Position numbers and translations under genes: made by a program. From assembly GCF_000143415.4 (NCBI RefSeq), contig NW_003314424.1, positions 157,647 through 221,646 of the forward strand: a stretch of DNA of 64,000 nt. The letters run 5' to 3'. Below the pieces are notes generated by a model. The model saw only the letters and a program-made list of their open reading frames with translations. It had not been told where the DNA came from and made no database searches. Source of the stretch: Selaginella moellendorffii (lineage: Eukaryota > Plantae > Lycopodiophyta). This document shows positions 1,372 to 50,124 of the stretch, in pieces; positions within the stretch are counted from its first letter, which is position 1; the number at the start of each line of letters is the position of its first letter.

Positions 1372-2192
1372 ATGGCTTTGGAGGCTGTCTTTAGCAAATG
1401 CTTTTCTGGAGCTGGGATTTCTCATGGATGTGGAAATTTCTTTCTAGGGGGATTTGCAGCAGCTGAGCTCGAGCTCCAGGTCGTGTTTCACGGGAAGGAA
1501 ATTGGCAGTAACAGGTGCGTGAGACACGTTTTCGACAGCGACAGTGCTCATTCGTGCATGTTTGCGGGCGCTCAATGTGGTACCTCCTCCAGTACGCAGG
1601 AGTACCCAAGAAATGCTGGTTCCTCTAAGATACGCTGCTCGTCAAATGATCCTCCCTCAGCTTGGCCAGAGCAATGGTGGATGGAGCTAGGAAAAAATCC
1701 TGGGATGGACCAAAGCCCATTTCACTTCTTGGATCCACGGGCTCCATCGGCACACAGGTTAGAATCCCTGTTTTCCTTCGTTTCCTATGCAAGCGATGAG
1801 GATGCTAACGTGGTGTTGTGCCACACACTTGACATCATCTCGGAAAACCCTGACAGATTCGAAGTTGTTGGCCTGGCTTCTGGCTCAAACGTTACACTTG
1901 TTGCTGATCAGGTAAACTACGAATTGGTCAGCCGTCGTATCTGTTTATACGAGCTTACACTGCCAATCAACAGGTCAGGAGATTCAAACCAAGCATGGTT
2001 GGGATTCGAGACCGAATTAAAAGAAGCCATTGCTGATCTTGACGAAAATCCAGAGATTGTCGTTGGGGACGAAGGAATTGTACAGGTACTTCAATTTGCT
2101 CAGTTGTTTTTTCTCATATTTTTTTTCTCTTGTGTTTGCTTTTTTTTGCTCTTCAGATAGCGTGTCATCCAGAGGCAGTAGAAGTTGTGGCA
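1372..2192 (+). pseudogene. DXR: 1-deoxy-D-xylulose 5-phosphate reductoisomerase 5' fragment, pseudogene
   Basis: Exons encode [60 protein letters not shown] and IACHPEAVEVVA. Lesions: frameshift near 1668, acceptor AG apparently changed to AC near 1823, deletion near 2012. Continues inverted at about 2430-2567. Confidence 0.9.
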
Positions 2193-14579: not shown

Positions 14580-16739
14580 CTAAGGGAGACTGGGACTTCG
14601 TCGTTGATCGGAGTTGAGCTCGTTTGCAAGCAGTGTGGTCCATGCCACACCGCCGGGAAGAAACGGCATTGTAAGCAGCAGCTCCCGAGCATCCTTGCTC
14701 CGTCCCGCCCGCCCCAACACGTCCAGCATGCAGTGGTAGTGCTCGCTCGAGTGGCTTATCCCATAGTCACTCGCCAGGCCCATGAAGTAGCGCATCCCCT
14801 TGTCCAGCAGGCCCCCGTGGCTGCACGAGAAGAGGACGCTCAGCATTGTCACCTGATCGGGAATGATGCCCTCCACCCCCATTGCACTGAAAACCTCCAC
14901 CGCCGCAGCGCCTTGTCCGTTGTGGGCATTTGCGGCAATGAGAGCACTCCAAGACACCACGTCTCGTTCCGGCATCCTATCAAACGTCGCCCTTGCTTCC
15001 ATCAGATGGCTGCTCTTCCCATACATGCTGATCACGGCATTGGACACCACCGTGTCGCCCGTAACGAGCTCCGATCCGTAGGCGTCTCCAAAGCTGGAGA
15101 GGACGATTCTCCCCTGGGACACCAGCCTCACGCTGGCGCAGGCCTCGAGGGCGCTCACCAGCGTCACTCTGTCACCTTGAAAACCCTCCATATCCATCGC
15201 CCGCACCAGCTGCAATGCCTCCTCGCCTTGCTCGCTCTGGGCATACGCCTGGATCACAAAGTTCCACGATATCACGTCCCGCACCGGCATCTCCTGCAGA
15301 AGCAACTCTCGTGCCGTGTCCAGATCCCCGTTGTGCGCATGCCCGGCAAGCAGCGCGTTCCAGGTGACCACGTCCTTCTCCGGCATCTCGTCAAACAGCG
15401 CCTTGGCCGCAACAACGTCGCCAGCCTGCGAGTAGGCCTGGACAAGCACATTCCACGCCACCCGGTTGCGCAGCGGCATGCTGTCAAACGCACGGCGTGC
15501 CGCCCTTAAGTCACCAGCGTCGGCGTACATGCCGACCATGCTGCTCCTCGTCACCACGTCCTGTTCCGGCATCTTGTCGAGGAGTGCCTCTGCCTCGCGA
15601 ATATTGCCCTCCCGAGCGTAGGCAGTGATCATAGTGTTCCACGTCCTTAAGTTCCTCCGAGGGGCTCTGTCAAAGAGATCTTTCGCCCTTGTCATGTCGC
15701 CGTGCTGGGAATGAGCTGCGATCATCGCGTTCCACGACACCATGTCTTGCTGTGGCATGCTCTCGAAAACTCTCACAGCCGTTTCCACCTCTCCAACTCG
15801 AACGTATGCCTGTATCAGCGCATTCCAAGCCGCAACGCATGTCTCCGGCATAGCATCAAATGCCTTGCGGGCCTTGCCAACATGTCCGTACCTGGCATAC
15901 GCTGCAATCAAGCTGGTCCACGACACTAAGTTTTTCTCTGGCATCGCATCAAACAGCTCCCTCACCTGAGTCATATCTCCCGATTCTGGATCATCTTCCT
16001 GAGATGAATATGCAGCAAGCATTGCGTTCCAGGAAACCACATTTCGCTCTGGCATGCCGTCAAACACTACTGCTGCCTTGTCTACTTGCCCTTCCCGGGC
16101 ATACGCTGCAGCCATAGTCGTCCACGACACAACATCCCTTTGTGGCATAGAATCGAAGGTTAGCTTGACTCCTGCAATATCGCTGTTTTGAGAGTACGCT
16201 TGCAGCATGGCGTTCCATGCAACCAGGTTTCGCTCTGGCATCAGATTGAAGAGGGTGACTGCCTCATGTAGCTGGCCGCAGGCAGCATACACAGAGATGA
16301 GAGCCACCCATGCAATGAAATCTCTCTCTGGCATCTTGTCGAATTTTTCTTTTGCGCTCTTGCAGCTTCCTTCCCGAGAGTAGGCTACCACCATAACCAC
16401 CCAAGAAACAAGATCGCGACGAGGCATTCTCTGGAATAAAAGCTCGGCCTCCAGCATATGCCCGTGTTGGGCATATGCAGAGACAATAATGTTCCAGGAA
16501 AAGACGTTGGGGCATGCCAAGCTCTCAAAGACCTTTCTCGCGTTTTCTAGGCTCCCACACTTGCTGTACATCTCCACGATCATGTTGCACACGTAGATGT
16601 TCCCACAGTGCTGGCTTTGTGCGAATAGCGAGTGCAGGCGTTGGCCGGCAGCGAGGTTCTTTGTCCTGGTGCACAGCTTGAAGGCCTCGGCGTAGGAATT
16701 GGGATCGTCTGGGATGGGACACACTTGGAGCTTGGCCAT
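14580..16739 (-). CDS. PLS-class PPR protein with many short (S/SS) repeats, truncated E domain, no DYW
   Basis: 719-aa intronless ORF with repeated FDxMPERDVVSWNAM units; ends HYHCMLDVLGRAG...WTTLLA. Confidence 0.93.
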   Translation of the reverse strand: MAKLQVCPIPDDPNSYAEAFKLCTRTKNLAAGQRLHSLFAQSQHCGNIYVCNMIVEMYSKCGSLENARKVFESLACPNVFSWNIIVSAYAQHGHMLEAELLFQRMPRRDLVSWVVMVVAYSREGSCKSAKEKFDKMPERDFIAWVALISVYAACGQLHEAVTLFNLMPERNLVAWNAMLQAYSQNSDIAGVKLTFDSMPQRDVVSWTTMAAAYAREGQVDKAAVVFDGMPERNVVSWNAMLAAYSSQEDDPESGDMTQVRELFDAMPEKNLVSWTSLIAAYARYGHVGKARKAFDAMPETCVAAWNALIQAYVRVGEVETAVRVFESMPQQDMVSWNAMIAAHSQHGDMTRAKDLFDRAPRRNLRTWNTMITAYAREGNIREAEALLDKMPEQDVVTRSSMVGMYADAGDLRAARRAFDSMPLRNRVAWNVLVQAYSQAGDVVAAKALFDEMPEKDVVTWNALLAGHAHNGDLDTARELLLQEMPVRDVISWNFVIQAYAQSEQGEEALQLVRAMDMEGFQGDRVTLVSALEACASVRLVSQGRIVLSSFGDAYGSELVTGDTVVSNAVISMYGKSSHLMEARATFDRMPERDVVSWSALIAANAHNGQGAAAVEVFSAMGVEGIIPDQVTMLSVLFSCSHGGLLDKGMRYFMGLASDYGISHSSEHYHCMLDVLGRAGRSKDARELLLTMPFLPGGVAWTTLLANELNSDQRRSPSLP

Positions 16740-18024
16740 CTTCCATCACTTCATACGCAGGACACGTCTGGAAAGAAGTGAAAAGCTCCATGAATGACAC
16801 AAGCAGCAGCAGTAGCAGCGAATTGTCAACACTACGCACCACGAGGAATGATGACGTGAGAAATCGTTAGTCCTTTGGGTCCTTTAGGATGCACGCGTGC
16901 CTTGTGCTCCCTTGCTGCTGCATAGTGGCTGAGCGATCCGATCATCCATTTATCCCAGCCTTGGAAAGCACCTAGGCTAGAGCGCCTTGAAACTTGCCCC
17001 AAGATCAAAGTTAGAACCAGAATTAAAAAAAATGTAACAATGTTTATATGCTTAAATAGATATGAAAAATGATTATTTTTAGACCATGGACATGAAAAAT
17101 TTAAAATAAATATGGAAGTAGAGATATGTATGAAGATTTTAAGGTGTGATTATGAGAAATAATTTAGATTTATAACTGAATTTATGGTGAATAGAAACCA
17201 AGACAAGCTATCATACGAGAATAAACACTCTATTGTAGCAACACTATATTGTAGGATTTTTGTAAAAATTTAACGTATATTTATTATTACATGTGATTAT
17301 TAAGAGATTAGGTGTACCAAAAATCTGAGAACGCAGCTACATTACTCGTGATTTGTTTGTATACACACTCACTTACACTTTGTTCCTTGAGCTTGAATTT
17401 GATTTGCCTTCAGTGACTATGTATATACATAGCATCATTCCCTTATAAAAAATTTACAAAGAATTTCTAATTCTCAGCTGCAAACGTCTTCACTAGCTCA
17501 TTTTCTAGTAGCGCCAATCTGTGTAAAAACCTCCTACTATCTGAGCTAAGAGCTTCAGCTCCTTATGCACACTAAAAGGTATCTACCTGGCTTCTTCGAA
17601 ACACACCTCAACAATGGAGCTCTTGAGTTTATTGCCACGGCCACAATGTCCTGTGACTTACTTATAAACCCCTCCTCTAAATCAAATCCTGTAAAACCGC
17701 CAATCTGCTTACAAATACCCCAGGCATATGTAGTATATCCACCTGTTTTGTAGCACGTCTTTTACTCTACTGACTTTTGAAACCAGCAAATCAAATCACT
17801 TTCTTCCTTGATTTTGTTCAAACAAGAGCTCCCATCCCCGTATACTCCTGTAGCTGGAATGGACCTGTTCTGGAAATGGATCCCCAATTAGCCGGACAAT
17901 TGTGAAGGTGTGAGAGGGAGATTAGAGAGTACGCCCTTGAGCCCAGGCAAATGTCAATCCCTGGCCAGTGTACGCGGGCGCATACGTATCGGTGATGCTG
18001 TGTGTGGCGTATGTACCGGCGAAA

Positions 18025-18207
18025 AGTCAATGAGCCATCCCCAAGCTCCCAGTTGTGACAGACAGATAATCTCAAAGTCAACTGCCCAACTTCCGGAACA
18101 AAGAAGAAGGAGAGACGAAGAATTGCAGGCCCAGCGCAAAACGCAAAGAAAGCTCCCTACCCCGTCCTTCCTGACCGTCGGTGATCGGGGCGACCGCCGC
18201 CAGTCAA
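18025..18207. promoter_or_regulatory. Three W-box cores (TTGACT on - strand) upstream of the PSK-like gene
   Basis: AGTCAA at 18025, 18076 and 18202; function inferred only. Confidence 0.3.
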
Positions 18208-18434
18208 CGTTCGACCAGCCCATCCGACGGTGGAGAGCCTGCCCCTTCCAACGGCTGGATGCACCCTTTATAAAGGGCGCATTTTCGATGGATGTTTTGC
18301 TGCTTCTTCGTTCGCTAACTATACGGGGCGTTCCTCCTTCTCTTCTCGCTTTCTCCTCTTTCTCTCTCTCTCACTCTCTCTATACTGCTCTGTAAGATCA
18401 ATCTCTTGAAAGCGTAGTTTGAATCTTACTAGTC

Positions 18435-18868
18435 ATGGGTATTCGCTGCAGCCTCTTGTTTCTTTCCTTGCTGCTAGCTGTCGACGTTCTCGCTCGGCCT
18501 CTTCCACCAGGTGAATGCAGTAATACTGCGGCAGAAACGAGTCCTGACTCACGGATTCGTCTTGCGTTGTGTTGTGCAGTACTAGAAAAGAAGAAGGATG
18601 CAGTGGAAGCAGCAGAGATCCTAGCTGAGAAGGAGGACTTGGATGCTGCGAGTGTGGTAATATACATACACAATCTGATTCGAGGCCTGCTTTGAATTTG
18701 ATCTCATGTCAAACACATGTTGGTTTTCATGACAAAACGCAGCAGCTGAAGGCGCAAGTCAAGTGCGAGGAATCCAAAACAGCTTCCGATCGTGTTGCTC
18801 GAGAGCTTGCTGACAAAGCTCCGGTGCCTGCTGATCATATAGATTACATCTACGATGTGGATCCTTGA
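18435..18868 (+). CDS. Phytosulfokine-like secreted peptide precursor, 92 aa, 3 exons (18435-18510, 18580-18656, 18743-18868)
   Basis: Signal peptide followed by ARP, acidic middle, in-frame GT-AG splicing, C-terminus ADHIDYIYDVDP* resembling the PSK AHxDYIYTQ motif. Confidence 0.75.
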
Positions 18869-19267
18869 TCCAGGCCTCTCTTTTTTTTCTCTACCCGAAT
18901 TCGAGCTCAAGATATGTACTATAGAGTGTGAGGGCCACGCGCAACTATCATCCTCTTCAAAATGTTATATGTGTTCTCCAGTTTACATCTCCGCATTGTA
19001 CAGAGCGGGGCGAGCATTATAGGGACAGGGCAGTGCAGCAAACATATAAAAAAGTCTCCTGTTCTTGGGAGTTTCGACTTTGATATACCGCATCTAAGAT
19101 ACAACTCTCGGGAGAACCATTGCTAAACTATAAGCTCTATAGACTTTTCAAACTCCATGTATGTATGCGTGTGCCAGTGTGAGAGTGTGTGTGTCACGAG
19201 TGGCGTGGGAAATATGGACATGATCACCGGGATTTTATGGAATGTGACGTTGGAACATATGATACAC

Positions 19268-20590
19268 TTAGAGGTTTGATTGATTATCATCTCTATCTTC
19301 GATCACCGGAGGAGCAGTAGTGGGATGAGGCGTGGCCGCATAAGATTCTAGTGCTTGCAGCAAAAACTCTTGACCCGACTCCACTCCGCTTTGCTCCATC
19401 TTGGACATAAGCACTGTCATCTTGTCCAGCTGCCGCTCCTCCCCATAGGCCTTGAACAGTATGAGGTACGAGGACACGGCGGGCTTGATGTCGAGCTTGG
19501 ACGCGTTGATGAACAGCGCCTCGGCCTCGTCCACCAGGCCGTGCTCAGCGTAGGCCCGCAGCAGCACGTCCAAGGTGGACACCTGCGGCTTGACGGGCGA
19601 CCGCACCATCTTGTCGAAGCACTTTCGCATCGTGTCCAGCTCCCCAGCCCGGCCGTAGGAGCTCATGAGCGTGTTGAAGGTGGTCAGGTCGGGGCCGAGG
19701 CCCGCCATGTCCATCCTCACCAGCACTTGCTCCATCTTTCCCAGCTCCCGCGACTGCCCGTAGCTCGCCAGCATCGAGTTGAAAGTGGTGGCCGAGGGCT
19801 TGCACCCGGACAAGTTGACGAGCGACTTGTAAGTCCGCTCCATCTTGACAAAGTCTCCCGCCCGGCCGTAAGCATCGATGAGGACGTTGAAGGTGACAAG
19901 GTCCGGCCTCACGCCATGCTCGCTCATCTCCTTGAGCTTGTACTCCATGTCGCGGTACAGCCCCTTCTTGGCGTAGGCGTCCATGATCCCGTTGAAAGTG
20001 TAGGCGTCGGGCTTGAGATCTTCTCGGCGCAGGAGCTCCAGGAAGAGCGCCTCGGCCTTGTCCGTGAGCCCGGCCTGCGCACACGCCCGGGTGAGCATGT
20101 TGTACGTGGCGAGGCTCGGGCACGAGTGGACGCTCGTCTTCATGTGGCCGAAGTGATCCAGCGCGCTGTCCAGCGCTCGCGCAACGTTCTTGCACCTCAG
20201 GTGAGCCATGATGATGGCATTCAACACCGGCGTGGTCCTGGACGAGAGCTGGAGCTGCGAGAAGATCCACGACGCCAGCCGCAGCTGCCCCTGCTTGCCC
20301 ATGGTGTCGATGATCTTGGCGTGCGCCACCTCAAGGTCCCGGTTGCTCAGCCGCGCCTCATTCTTTTGCAGCCACTTGAAGAGCTGTGGCGATGACAAAC
20401 ACATCAAAACCTCGCTTGATCGAGCACGATGAACTAACCGCGAGCGCCAGCGCCCAGTCGTTGAGCCTGCCAATCTCGTCCACCAGCGCCATGAATCCAT
20501 CCACGGGAATGTGCCTCGCGTACTTGTCCAGGACGTGGCTCTTGCTGCTCTTCTTGTCTTGGAGCTCGTGGAGAATCCTCATCACGGCCG

Positions 20591-47759: not shown

Positions 47760-50124
47760 TCTTCTCCAGTTCGCATGTTGCTTTACATGTGGAATCCTTT
47801 CCACTTCACATGGAACTCTCTCACCTCGCGTCCTTGTCACTTGCTCTTGCGCGCATTGAGGATGGCTTCAACTTCATATTCCTCTTCCCCTTGGATAACC
47901 TCAGGTAAAGGTCTTATTTGGTCCTTGCGAAGCGGATCCTCAAAGTACGGCTTGAGTAAGTTCACGTGGAACACTAGTGCATCTTCCCCATCTCTCGAGG
48001 AAGTCGGAGACGGTAAGCCACTTTACCAATTCGTGCCTCAATCTCGTAAAGCCCTGCGAACCTACTTAAGGAACTCAAGATCAATTCATTTATAGGAATA
48101 CATGCATTTTTACCTTTGGGTCAACTTCCGGCTGATCCCACTTGGTGGCCTGAGGTTCTTGGTGTTTAGCCACACCTTCTCCCCAACTTGGAACTCTACA
48201 TCCCGGCGCTTCTGGATATTGCTAACTTCAAGCTTGCTTTTCAACTCAGCGTATATGCCACAATGTTGCTCTTCCCAGGCTTGTATAGAATCTCGCAATC
48301 AAACTCGGCCAAGGCATTGGCCCACCGACCCTATTTACCTCTCAAGTCGGGCTGTGACAAGAAGTGTTTCATTGCCACATTGTTTGTGTAAACCTTGAAG
48401 TGTCTCCCAAGGTAGTGTTGCCACTCCTTGAGTGCCTTGACCACCGCAAACAATTCCTTCTCGTGGGTAGGCCACTTCCTTTGAGCCTTGTCCAACTTCT
48501 TCGAGAAGAACACTACTGGATGGTTGTCTTGCTTCAAAACTACACCCAACGCAAAGTCTGAAGCATCCATTTCTACCTTAAAGTCCTTACCAAAGTTTGG
48601 TAATGCCAACACAGGAGCCTTCCTCAACTTCCCTTTGAGGTGGATGAATGTCGCCTTGCATTCTACTGTCCATACCATCTTCCCTTTTCTTGTTTGGTTT
48701 GTTAAGGGCAGGGCTACTCTCGAATAGTGTCTGATAAACTTTCGGTAGTAGTTGCATAGCCCCAAGAACGCCCTCAACTCATGTACATTCGATAGTCACT
48801 CCCATTCCTGGATCGCTTGGACCTTCTCTGGGTCCACCTTGAGCCCATCCTGGCCCACCACATGCCCGAGAAACTTTACCTTTTGTTGAGGAAAGTCACA
48901 TTTACTCTCTTTAGCATACAGTTTGTGTTCCCTTAGTTTCTCAAACACCTTCGTCAAGTGTTTGGCATGCTCCTCTAGCATCTCGCTATAGATTAGGATG
49001 TCGTTGATATAGACGACCACGAAGTGATCTAGATAGGGTACAAAGATATGGTTCATTAACGCTAAAACCATTGCTAGCGCATTGCACAGCCCAAAGGGCA
49101 TCACCAAAAACTCAAAGCTCCCATATCTAGTTCGATAGGTTGTCTTTTCGACATCTTTCTCTGCTACCCTGATATAGTAGTATCCTGACCTCAGGTCAAT
49201 CCTTGAGAAATATTTTGCCTTTCCCAACCTATCGAACAGGTCCTCAATCCTTGGCAAAGGGTACTTGTTCTTCTTTGTATACTTGTTGAGCAACTGGTAG
49301 TTTATGCACATATGCATAGATCCATCTTTCTTTTTCACCAATAACACCAGCGCCCCATACGGCGACTTGCTCAACCTAACATACCCTTTGTCCACCAACT
49401 CCTCTAGTTGGCGCTTGAGCTTCTCGAGTTCTTTTTTGTTCAAACGATAGGGGGGATGAACCACCGCCTCAGCACCCTCGAATAGCTCAATCTTATGTTG
49501 TATCAGTCGTGCGGGGGGCAACTCCACTAGTAACTCCTCCAGCATGGTATCCTGGAATTGGTCCAACACCCGCTGGATCACTAAAGGTACTTCTTCCGTT
49601 CCTGTCTTTTTGTCACTCTTCACCGAAAGTAAGCACAAAAATGCTACCTTAGTTCCTTTAGTGAGTTGTCCTCTCGTGGACACCAGGTTTAAGCAGGAAT
49701 CTTTGGCCTTGCTTTGCCCTACCTTTAGATCCTGGGCCTCCACCCTAGATCTTCTTCCTTGGGCATTCGCCAGTACCACAAGGTTCCTACCTTGTCCATG
49801 CAGGGCTACCATGAACCGATTGAACCAATCCATTCCGAAGATCACGTCAAATCCCGCCATGTCCAACATGGTGAAATCCATATCTACTTTCCATGTCCCT
49901 ACTTCGACTCTTGCTTGTCGAAGTACCTCATCGGTGCTTTGGCTACCTTGAACAAACTCTATAGTCCTTGGTTCGCCTAGCCGCTGCACCGTTAGTCTAG
50001 CTTGCCAAACTATGTCTGCAGCCACAAAATTATCCGAAGCACCTGTGTCAATAAAGATCTTAACAAAGCTACCTCCAAGCTTCCCTCGGAGGGCTAGTAG
50101 ATGTTGCGAATGACTCTCTACCAA
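47760..50124 (-). pseudogene. Gypsy pol: protease, RT, RNase H, integrase C-terminus and chromodomain, disrupted
   Basis: [37 protein letters not shown] (YIDD mutated), MDASDFALG, EKELFAVV, FQVGEKVWL, YEVEAILN..FHVKWKGF. Confidence 0.92.

What the first reader, a model, noticed from the sequence alone, without database searches (positions are those of the whole stretch)
18435..18868. Hidden phytosulfokine-like peptide gene with a non-canonical YIYDV pentapeptide
Seen: three exons splice in frame to MGIRCSLLFLSLLLAVDVLARPLPPVLEKKKDAVEAAEILAEKEDLDAASVQLKAQVKCEESKTASDRVARELADKAPVPADHIDYIYDVDP. The ORF track misses the key last exon. Known: PSK precursors are about 80-120 aa with a signal peptide, an acidic prodomain and C-terminal HxD-YIYTQ; the Asp-Tyr pair directs tyrosine sulfation; variants I know are YVYTQ, YIYTN and YVYTN. 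Inference: this is a divergent sulfated peptide (YIYDV or YIYDVDP), possibly a lineage-specific ligand or antagonist. Only one prodomain Cys and no RR site are present, so processing may differ.
Basis: partly seen in the sequence, partly recalled or inferred. Interest (0 to 1): 0.82.

Follow-up and report, generated by a model that had tools for sequence, protein, structure and literature searches.

The report
Spikemoss phytosulfokine-like secreted peptide gene
A small unannotated three-exon gene in the spikemoss Selaginella moellendorffii is transcribed and spliced as predicted. It encodes a 92-residue secreted precursor ending in HIDYIYDVDP, which resembles the plant growth hormone phytosulfokine, a hormone the literature says arose only in seed plants. 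Sulfation, processing and hormone activity are not shown.

Summary
Exons 18435-18510, 18580-18656 and 18743-18868 (+) join GT..AG in frame to a 92-aa ORF. Assembled RNA contigs from two runs of two studies carry exactly both junctions. This ORF starts at the first ATG of the mRNA model and is its only long ORF. It has a signal-peptide-like N-terminus. The neighbouring PPR gene is 99% identical to SELMODRAFT_135826, so the genome is Selaginella moellendorffii or a very close relative.

The architecture fits a phytosulfokine (PSK) precursor: signal peptide, acidic prodomain, then H-x-D-Y-I-Y seven residues from the end. Positions 4 and 5 are D-V instead of T-Q. The paired Cys and the RR are absent. 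No profile or sequence search links it to any protein.

Best reading (0.55): precursor of a Tyr-sulfated short peptide with a YIY core, a lycophyte variant of PSK. True homology, sulfation and a receptor are inferred only.

This scan had already noted sister genes ending DYIYDF(N/S)P on other DNA of this genome (s1-388136, s1-351356). I could not read them. Reviews from 2024 and 2026 place the origin of PSK in seed plants, so the family matters if it is real.

The parts
18269..18274 (+). TATAAA box of the putative promoter
   Evidence: The only TATAAA in 18200-18434. It lies about 50 nt upstream of the first base seen in a spliced RNA contig (18324). Its role as a promoter is inferred.
18324..18434 (+). 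5' UTR (minimum extent), CT-rich, no upstream ATG
   Evidence: X2 contig record 6 starts at 18324 and is spliced. Within 18290-18434 the only ATG is at 18292, upstream of that contig start; the read sequence also shows one at 18288.
18435..18510 (+). Exon 1 coding part: start codon, signal peptide (n-region MGIR, hydrophobic core, VLA|RP cleavage candidate after residue 20)
   Evidence: Purine at -3 and G at +4 around the ATG.
18511..18579 (+). Intron 1, 69 nt, GT..AG, phase 1
   Evidence: Skipped in contigs of X2 (2 contigs) and X9; splice sites.
18580..18656 (+). Exon 2: charged, Ala/Glu/Lys-rich prodomain
18657..18742 (+). Intron 2, 86 nt, GT..AG, phase 0, GC 0.37
   Evidence: Skipped in contigs of X2 and X9.
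18743..18868 (+). Exon 3 coding part with stop codon: rest of the prodomain (single Cys59) and the C-terminal motif
18833..18865 (+). Codons for D-H-I-D-Y-I-Y-D-V-D-P, the PSK-like motif (DYIY = 18842-18853), followed directly by the stop codon
   Evidence: Six-frame motif scan and translation.
18869..18992 (+). 3' UTR (minimum extent)
   Evidence: X2 contigs reach 18992. The X9 contig runs on into the convergent PPR gene, so the true 3' end is not defined.

Best explanation
This is a gene for a small secreted prepropeptide of Selaginella moellendorffii. It is built like a phytosulfokine precursor and is probably one divergent member of a lycophyte family whose C-terminus reads [A/D]-H-x-D-Y-I-Y-D-[F/V]-x-P-stop.

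Proposed mechanism (inferred):
- The signal peptide is removed after about residue 20.
- In the Golgi, tyrosylprotein sulfotransferase sulfates the Tyr after Asp, and probably the second Tyr. The local sequence is very acidic, with four Asp in ten residues.
- In the apoplast, Asp-dependent subtilases (phytaspase type, Asp in P1; SBT3.8 type, Asp in P1') cut at HID|YIY and possibly at YIYDV|DP.
- This releases a sulfated peptide of 4-7 residues with the sY-I-sY core. That peptide would act as an extracellular signal, most plausibly through a PSKR-like island-domain LRR receptor kinase.

Shown: the gene model, transcription, splicing, the motif and the signal-peptide-like N-terminus. Inferred: secretion, sulfation, cleavage sites, receptor, and homology with seed-plant PSK.
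For: - Gene model and both junctions are seen in RNA contigs of two studies. About 14 further RNA-like runs from at least 7 studies hold 0.35-0.58 of the sampled words. A spliced mRNA would give about 0.64 of the 801-nt query.
- The 92-aa ORF starts at the first ATG and is the only long ORF of the mRNA model.
- The N-terminus has a basic n-region, a 12-residue hydrophobic core and V-x-A before the candidate cleavage site. The remainder is acidic (17 D/E against 10 K/R, pI 4.5).
- It meets the PSK-precursor features as defined in PMC10796568: 80-120 aa, N-terminal signal peptide, peptide close to the C-terminus, conserved Asp before it, and otherwise little similarity among precursors.
- Asp in P1 at the N-side and Asp in P1' at the C-side match published processing rules for tomato PSK and Arabidopsis proPSK1.
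- TPST is reported in S. moellendorffii (PMC8462819).
- Chance expectation for the motif at that place is about 5e-4.
- Only 7 residues follow the Asp, which excludes PSY, RGF and CIF-type peptides of 13-24 residues (table in PMC11534595).
- Scan notes report at least 10 similar three-exon genes in the same genome ending DYIYDFNP, DYIYDFSP or AHVD-YIYDFNP. I did not verify them.
Against: - The Pfam PSK model does not hit exon 3, even at E<=10.
- No word-sharing or HMMER relative was found among 5.8 billion and 1.84 billion proteins. The ESM Atlas gave no usable hit.
- Positions 4 and 5 of the pentapeptide (D-V) occur in no described plant PSK. [quoted passage not shown]
- There is only one prodomain Cys, no RR, and D-H instead of A-H before x-D-Y.
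- The gene has three exons, whereas seed-plant PSK genes usually have two (from my own knowledge, not checked here).
- No orthologue or paralogue sequence was available to me, so conservation and selection are untested here.
- No peptide, sulfation or receptor data exist.
Confidence: 0.55

Rival explanations
1. It is a lineage-specific sulfated or unsulfated secreted peptide that arose independently of PSK. The D-Y-I-Y resemblance would be convergent, and the peptide would work through a different receptor.
For: No profile or sequence link to PSK precursors. Positions 4-5, the Cys pattern and the exon number all differ. Literature surveys find no PSK outside seed plants (PMC10796568; PMC13074997). 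The shared signal is only six residues.
Against: PSK precursors are in any case alike only in the peptide and the preceding Asp. The whole architecture (length, signal peptide, motif position, H at -3, D at -1) matches. Short peptides do not allow a formal distinction between homology and convergence.
Confidence: 0.2
2. It is an ordinary small secreted or ER-targeted acidic protein without a signalling peptide. On this reading the C-terminal motif has no function.
For: No functional data and no relatives found by me. The prodomain is a generic charged, helix-prone sequence.
Against: The motif at this position is very unlikely by chance (about 5e-4). Scan notes report the same C-terminal motif in many paralogues, with selection on it in one pair (s1-388136; unverified).
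Confidence: 0.15
3. The Tyr-containing C-terminus is the core of a ribosomally made, Tyr-cross-linked peptide (burpitide type) rather than a sulfated hormone.
For: A scan note (s1-358591; unverified) reports a split BURP cyclase system with Tyr-ending cores in this genome. The motif holds two Tyr.
Against: There is one core only, not repeats. The ORFs of the window that were scanned are PPR, a DXR fragment and a retroelement, and none has a BURP domain. The Asp-Tyr context and H-x-D-Y-I-Y fit PSK far better.
Confidence: 0.05

Closest known systems
Seed-plant phytosulfokine precursors (PSK-alpha YIYTQ; variants YVYTQ, YIYTN, YVYTN, YIYTH; Pfam PF06404)
   Same: [quoted passage not shown] H-x-D-Y-I-Y lies a few residues from the C-terminus. 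Asp precedes the first Tyr (TPST determinant and phytaspase P1 site). Asp follows the putative pentapeptide, as in Arabidopsis proPSK1.
   Different: Positions 4-5 are D-V instead of T-Q/N/H. It has one Cys instead of the usual pair, no RR, D-H instead of A-H, and three exons. The Pfam profile does not hit the motif exon. The host is a lycophyte, where PSK has not been reported.
Putative PSK-like genes of Marchantia polymorpha and Physcomitrium patens (YIYTSQ; Furumizu et al. 2021, PMC8462819)
   Same: Candidate PSK relatives in non-seed plants, recognised only by the short motif and the adjacent region.
   Different: Those lack the Asp before the first Tyr and keep Thr at position 4. The gene here keeps H-x-D-Y but has Asp at position 4.
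Root-knot nematode PSK mimics, theta class DYIYDN and omega class DYVYDN (preprint PMC13081851)
   Same: The same Thr-to-Asp change at position 4 of the core, in a secreted precursor with a C-terminal motif.
   Different: These are animal effector genes with position 5 Asn, and the omega class carries amidation signals. [quoted passage not shown] If the Selaginella motif is a true PSK variant, that statement would need revision.
Other Asp-Tyr sulfopeptides: PSY, RGF/GLV/CLEL, CIF/TWS1
   Same: Secreted precursors with a C-terminal peptide that begins with a sulfated D-Y.
   Different: Their mature peptides have 13-24 residues, are Pro-rich and often end in N or H. Here only 7 residues follow the Asp.
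PSK-like genes noted elsewhere in this genome by this scan (s1-388136, s1-351356, s1-433146, s1-405263 and others)
   Same: Three-exon hidden genes for small secreted proteins ending D-Y-I-Y-D-hydrophobic-x-P-stop.
   Different: Those end in DFNP or DFSP, and this one ends in DVDP. It shares fewer than three 5-residue words with anything in the protein collection, so it is a divergent copy. I could not read the other sequences.

Membership tests
Phytosulfokine (PSK) precursor family | N-terminal secretory signal peptide | tested here: met
   Basic n-region, hydrophobic core at residues 5-16, V-x-A at -3/-1 before R21. This is a heuristic; no dedicated predictor was available.
Phytosulfokine (PSK) precursor family | Precursor length about 80-120 aa (77-109 in Arabidopsis) | tested here: met
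   92 aa; ranges from PMC10796568 and PMC11534595.
Phytosulfokine (PSK) precursor family | Peptide motif close to the C-terminus | tested here: met
   The first Tyr of the motif is residue 86 of 92.
Phytosulfokine (PSK) precursor family | Conserved Asp directly before the first Tyr (sulfation determinant; phytaspase P1) | tested here: met
   D85-Y86, with H at -3; rule.
Phytosulfokine (PSK) precursor family | Pentapeptide Y-[IV]-Y-T-[QNH] | tested here: not met
   The sequence is Y-I-Y-D-V. Positions 1-3 agree and positions 4-5 do not. T-to-D is stated to be unknown in plant PSKs.
Phytosulfokine (PSK) precursor family | Upstream signature with two Cys and R-R before A-H-x-D-Y (Lorbiecke and Sauter 2002 signature, recalled from memory) | tested here: not met
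   One prodomain Cys (C59), no RR, D-H instead of A-H.
Phytosulfokine (PSK) precursor family | Match to the Pfam PSK profile (PF06404) | tested here: inconclusive
   No Pfam hit for exon 3, the 58-aa ORF or exon 1 at E<=10. The spliced full-length protein has no reference and was not submitted.
Phytosulfokine (PSK) precursor family | Detectable sequence relatives among annotated PSK precursors | tested here: not met
   Searches found nothing. PSK precursors share little similarity outside the motif even among themselves, so this test is weak.
Phytosulfokine (PSK) precursor family | O-sulfation of both Tyr by TPST | not testable with these tools
   Needs mass spectrometry or an in vitro TPST assay. 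TPST is reported present in S. moellendorffii.
Phytosulfokine (PSK) precursor family | Perception by a PSKR-type LRR receptor kinase | not testable with these tools
   No receptor data. Presence of a PSKR orthologue in this genome was not checked.
PSY / RGF / CIF sulfopeptide families | Mature peptide of 13-24 residues starting D-Y, Pro-rich | tested here: not met
   Only 7 residues follow the Asp, with one Pro; lengths from PMC11534595.
Selaginella YIYD-type PSK-like genes (scan-internal grouping) | Three exons; C-terminus D-Y-I-Y-D-hydrophobic-x-P-stop | tested here: met
   This gene has three exons and ends D-Y-I-Y-D-V-D-P-stop. The pattern of the other members is known to me only from note titles.
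Selaginella YIYD-type PSK-like genes (scan-internal grouping) | Alignable prodomain or signal peptide showing common descent with the other copies | not testable with these tools
No copy is in the protein collections and there is no second copy in this window.

The most novel reading that the evidence does not exclude
PSK-type signalling predates seed plants. On this reading, lycophytes carry a hidden multigene family of true PSK homologues whose ligand core is sY-I-sY-D-[F/V](-x-P). These would be sulfated by the conserved TPST and read by a co-evolved PSKR orthologue. That would fill the 'enzyme precedes its substrates' gap and would show that the Thr-to-Asp core variant used by root-knot nematode mimics also exists in plants.
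Probability: 0.35. Interest if true: 0.75.

Novelty: new variant of a known kind. Interest (0 to 1): 0.6.

Why it matters
Current reviews and surveys say that no PSK exists outside seed plants (PMC10796568). They say PSK 'emerged in gymnosperms' while TPST is much older, so that 'the enzyme precedes its substrates' (PMC13074997). Only doubtful candidates lacking the Asp are proposed for a moss and a liverwort (PMC8462819). An expressed lycophyte gene with signal peptide, H-x-D-Y-I-Y and Asp-flanked cleavage sites is a concrete candidate TPST substrate in an early vascular plant. It makes the origin of PSK signalling testable with a synthetic peptide, a TPST assay and a receptor-binding assay. 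It also shows that such genes escape annotation and homology searches. That could explain the reported absence.

Tried and rejected
- Pfam on exon 3, on the 58-aa ORF and on exon 1: no family.
- Word-indexed protein search with exon 3 and with the unspliced 86-aa ORF that carries exons 1 and 2 in frame: no relative. Not even the gene's own product was found, so the gene is unannotated there.
- phmmer of exon 3 against 1.84 billion representatives: 0 hits.
- ESM Atlas with exon 3: no usable hit.
- Metagenome contig scan: 374 pattern matches, none a relative.
- Six-frame search for D-Y-[IVL]-Y and tblastn in the window: no second copy. A DYVYT-stop at 17415-17426 lies in AT-rich intergenic DNA with stops just upstream, and about one such match is expected by chance, so I rejected it.
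- Fetching the allelic or public scaffold through the neighbouring PPR protein P0001: not on record.
- Exact look-ups of three neighbouring ORFs: not in the collection.
- Findings search by sequence: blank.
- Supplements of PMC8462819 are not held. PlantSSP tables held for PMC4526923 list no Selaginella PSK entries in the part stored.
- Not done: the spliced 92-aa protein was not handed to remote tools because it has no reference and I did not type it.
- Not done: no real PSK precursor sequences could be obtained, so no profile-profile comparison was made.

Full report
**Observation**

The sequence at 18435-18868 (+) holds three exons: 18435-18510, 18580-18656 and 18743-18868. The introns are 69 and 86 nt and both have GT..AG ends. 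The joined CDS is 279 nt and reads 92 codons plus a stop, ending in A-D-H-I-D-Y-I-Y-D-V-D-P.

I laid the contigs of four public runs on 18000-19300 (1301 letters, within the operators' limit).
- Run X2 (study P2) and run X9 (study P4, another organism label) both contain contigs that skip exactly the two introns. The tool reports 18507>18577 with cut +3 and 18655>18742 with cut +1, which are the junctions 18510/18580 and 18656/18743.
- One 2057-nt X9 contig carries both junctions.
- Run X15 has an unspliced contig covering 18173-18865, as DNA would give.
- The direction of GT..AG puts the RNA on the + strand.
- In the run search, 14 RNA-like runs from at least seven studies hold 0.35-0.58 of the sampled words of an 801-nt query. 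A spliced mRNA would cover about 0.64 of that query. Only X1, X2, X9 and X15 were laid.

The 92-aa ORF is the only long ORF of the mRNA model, and the next longest on the same strand has 8 aa. It begins at the first ATG of the mRNA model, with a purine at -3 and G at +4. A single TATAAA sits at 18269-18274, about 50 nt before the first transcribed base seen.

**Organism and context**

The convergent downstream gene (19268-20500, minus strand) is a PPR protein. It is 99% identical to hypothetical protein SELMODRAFT_135826 of Selaginella moellendorffii, and the next best hit has 36% identity. The window is thus S. moellendorffii or a very close relative. That agrees with earlier notes of this scan.

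Upstream lies another PPR gene (14580-16739, minus strand). The window holds no second copy of the peptide gene.

**What the protein looks like**

- Residues 1-20 have a basic n-region, a 12-residue hydrophobic core and V-x-A before a candidate cleavage site.
- The rest is acidic (17 D/E against 10 K/R, pI 4.5) and rich in A, E, K and D.
- The last eleven residues are D-H-I-D-Y-I-Y-D-V-D-P.

Reviews define a PSK precursor as follows (PMC10796568; PMC11534595):
- it has 80-120 aa (77-109 in Arabidopsis);
- it has a signal peptide;
- the pentapeptide lies close to the C-terminus;
- the preceding Asp is highly conserved;
- precursors share little similarity otherwise.

All of these features are met. 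The exception is the pentapeptide, which is Y-I-Y-D-V instead of Y-[IV]-Y-T-[QNH].

The Asp before the first Tyr is the sulfation determinant. It is also the P1 residue of the phytaspase-type cut. The Asp after 'YIYDV' mirrors the P1' Asp on which SBT3.8 depends when it cuts Arabidopsis proPSK1 at the C-side (10.1101/2020.10.21.349779). The internal Asp at position 4 could equally be a phytaspase site. The mature form could therefore be YIYD, YIYDV or the uncut YIYDVDP.

PSY, RGF and CIF-type peptides (13-24 residues after D-Y) are excluded by length.

A rough estimate of chance: H-x-D-Y-I-Y in the last ten residues of one of about 958 small secreted proteins of this species is expected about 5e-4 times.

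**What speaks against membership**

- Pfam finds nothing in exon 3.
- The word-indexed search of 5.8 billion proteins finds neither relatives nor the gene's own product. The gene is therefore unannotated there.
- phmmer of exon 3 against 1.84 billion representatives gives no hit.
- The ESM Atlas gives nothing usable, and a metagenome scan gives nothing.
- The paired Cys and the RR that usually precede A-H-x-D-Y-I-Y-T-Q are absent. That signature is recalled from my own knowledge of Lorbiecke and Sauter 2002.
- The gene has three exons rather than the usual two (also from my own knowledge).

These negatives are weak. The conserved part of PSK precursors is very short, and the full-length spliced protein could not be submitted by reference. 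Still, they mean that membership rests on six residues plus architecture. I therefore file the gene as PSK-like, not as a proven PSK.

**Relatives**

I could not obtain any paralogue or orthologue sequence. This scan's notebook lists at least ten other first-reader notes on this genome. They describe hidden three-exon genes ending DYIYDFNP, DYIYDFSP, AHVD-YIYDFNP or DYIYSG.

Two of them have follow-ups. In s1-351356 the gene was transcribed and spliced as predicted. In s1-388136, a tandem pair, the motif was reported as kept by selection.

If these notes hold, the family consensus is [A/D]-H-x-D-Y-I-Y-D-[F/V]-x-P-stop. That consensus contains the full A-H-x-D-Y-I-Y of seed-plant PSK. The present gene would then be a divergent member, with V for F and D-H for A-H. 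These are unchecked AI notes and I count them as leads only.

**Mechanism proposed**

The proposed steps are secretion, Tyr sulfation by TPST, Asp-dependent subtilase cuts, and release of a short sulfated peptide with the sY-I-sY core that acts as an extracellular signal. TPST is reported in S. moellendorffii (PMC8462819). The steps after translation are all inferred.

I give 0.55 to this reading as a whole. My estimates for the parts are:
- a real expressed gene: about 0.97;
- secretion: about 0.85;
- sulfation: about 0.6;
- true homology with seed-plant PSK: about 0.45.

The rivals are a convergent lineage-specific peptide (0.2), a secreted protein without a signalling peptide (0.15), and a Tyr-cross-linked ribosomal peptide core (0.05).

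**Comparison with the literature**

- PMC13074997 concludes that PSK emerged in gymnosperms and that TPST precedes its substrates.
- PMC13091385 calls PSK a vascular-plant innovation.
- PMC8462819 proposes PSK-like sequences (YIYTSQ, without the Asp) in Marchantia and Physcomitrium. It names no PSK-like sequence for Selaginella.
- A 2026 preprint on nematode PSK mimics describes a DYIYDN class and calls the Thr-to-Asp change absent from all plant PSKs.
- A full-text search for YIYD, YIYDF, DYIYD and YIYDV found no plant paper.

Within the held library, a lycophyte D-Y-I-Y-D family is therefore undescribed.

**Verdict**

The finding is a real, expressed, unannotated gene. Its reading as a non-canonical PSK-like sulfopeptide precursor is plausible but unproven. 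It is one more, rather divergent, member of a group this scan has already met elsewhere in the same genome. I rate it as a new variant of a known kind, interest 0.6.

Noticed in passing
window 18869-19300 and 19268-20500 (-): The peptide gene and the downstream PPR gene are convergent, with only 400 nt between their stop codons. One assembled RNA contig (X9, 2057 nt) runs from the peptide gene through into the PPR gene. Their 3' ends may therefore overlap tail to tail, or the assembler may have merged two transcripts.
   Followed up: partly
window 19184-19192: Contigs of runs X1 and X9 carry an extra GT after 19184 and T>A at 19192, inside a GT-rich stretch. This looks like a microsatellite-type polymorphism between the assembly and the sequenced samples.
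   Followed up: no
window 17415-17426 (+): A frame reads S-D-Y-V-Y-T-stop, about 1 kb upstream of the gene. It lies in AT-rich intergenic DNA with stop codons just upstream, so I judged it a chance match (about one D-Y-[IVL]-Y is expected in the six frames of 64 kb).
   Followed up: partly
window 14580-16739 (-) and 19268-20500 (-): Two intronless PPR genes (719 aa and 410 aa ORFs) flank the peptide gene. The annotated public product SELMODRAFT_135826 is 449 aa and covers 90% of the 410-aa ORF, so the public model differs at one end.
   Followed up: partly
window 48796-50124 (-): An ORF with retroviral-type aspartyl protease and reverse transcriptase domains, in the AT-rich half of the window. 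It is an LTR retroelement fragment.
   Followed up: no
window 1372-2160 (+): An ORF with a short match to the N-terminal domain of 1-deoxy-D-xylulose 5-phosphate reductoisomerase, probably one exon of the DXR gene.
   Followed up: no
window 18158-18314 and 18654-18771: Run X1 has contigs over the promoter region and over unspliced intron 2. That run therefore holds genomic DNA or pre-mRNA of this locus. It is labelled RNA only as a guess.
   Followed up: no
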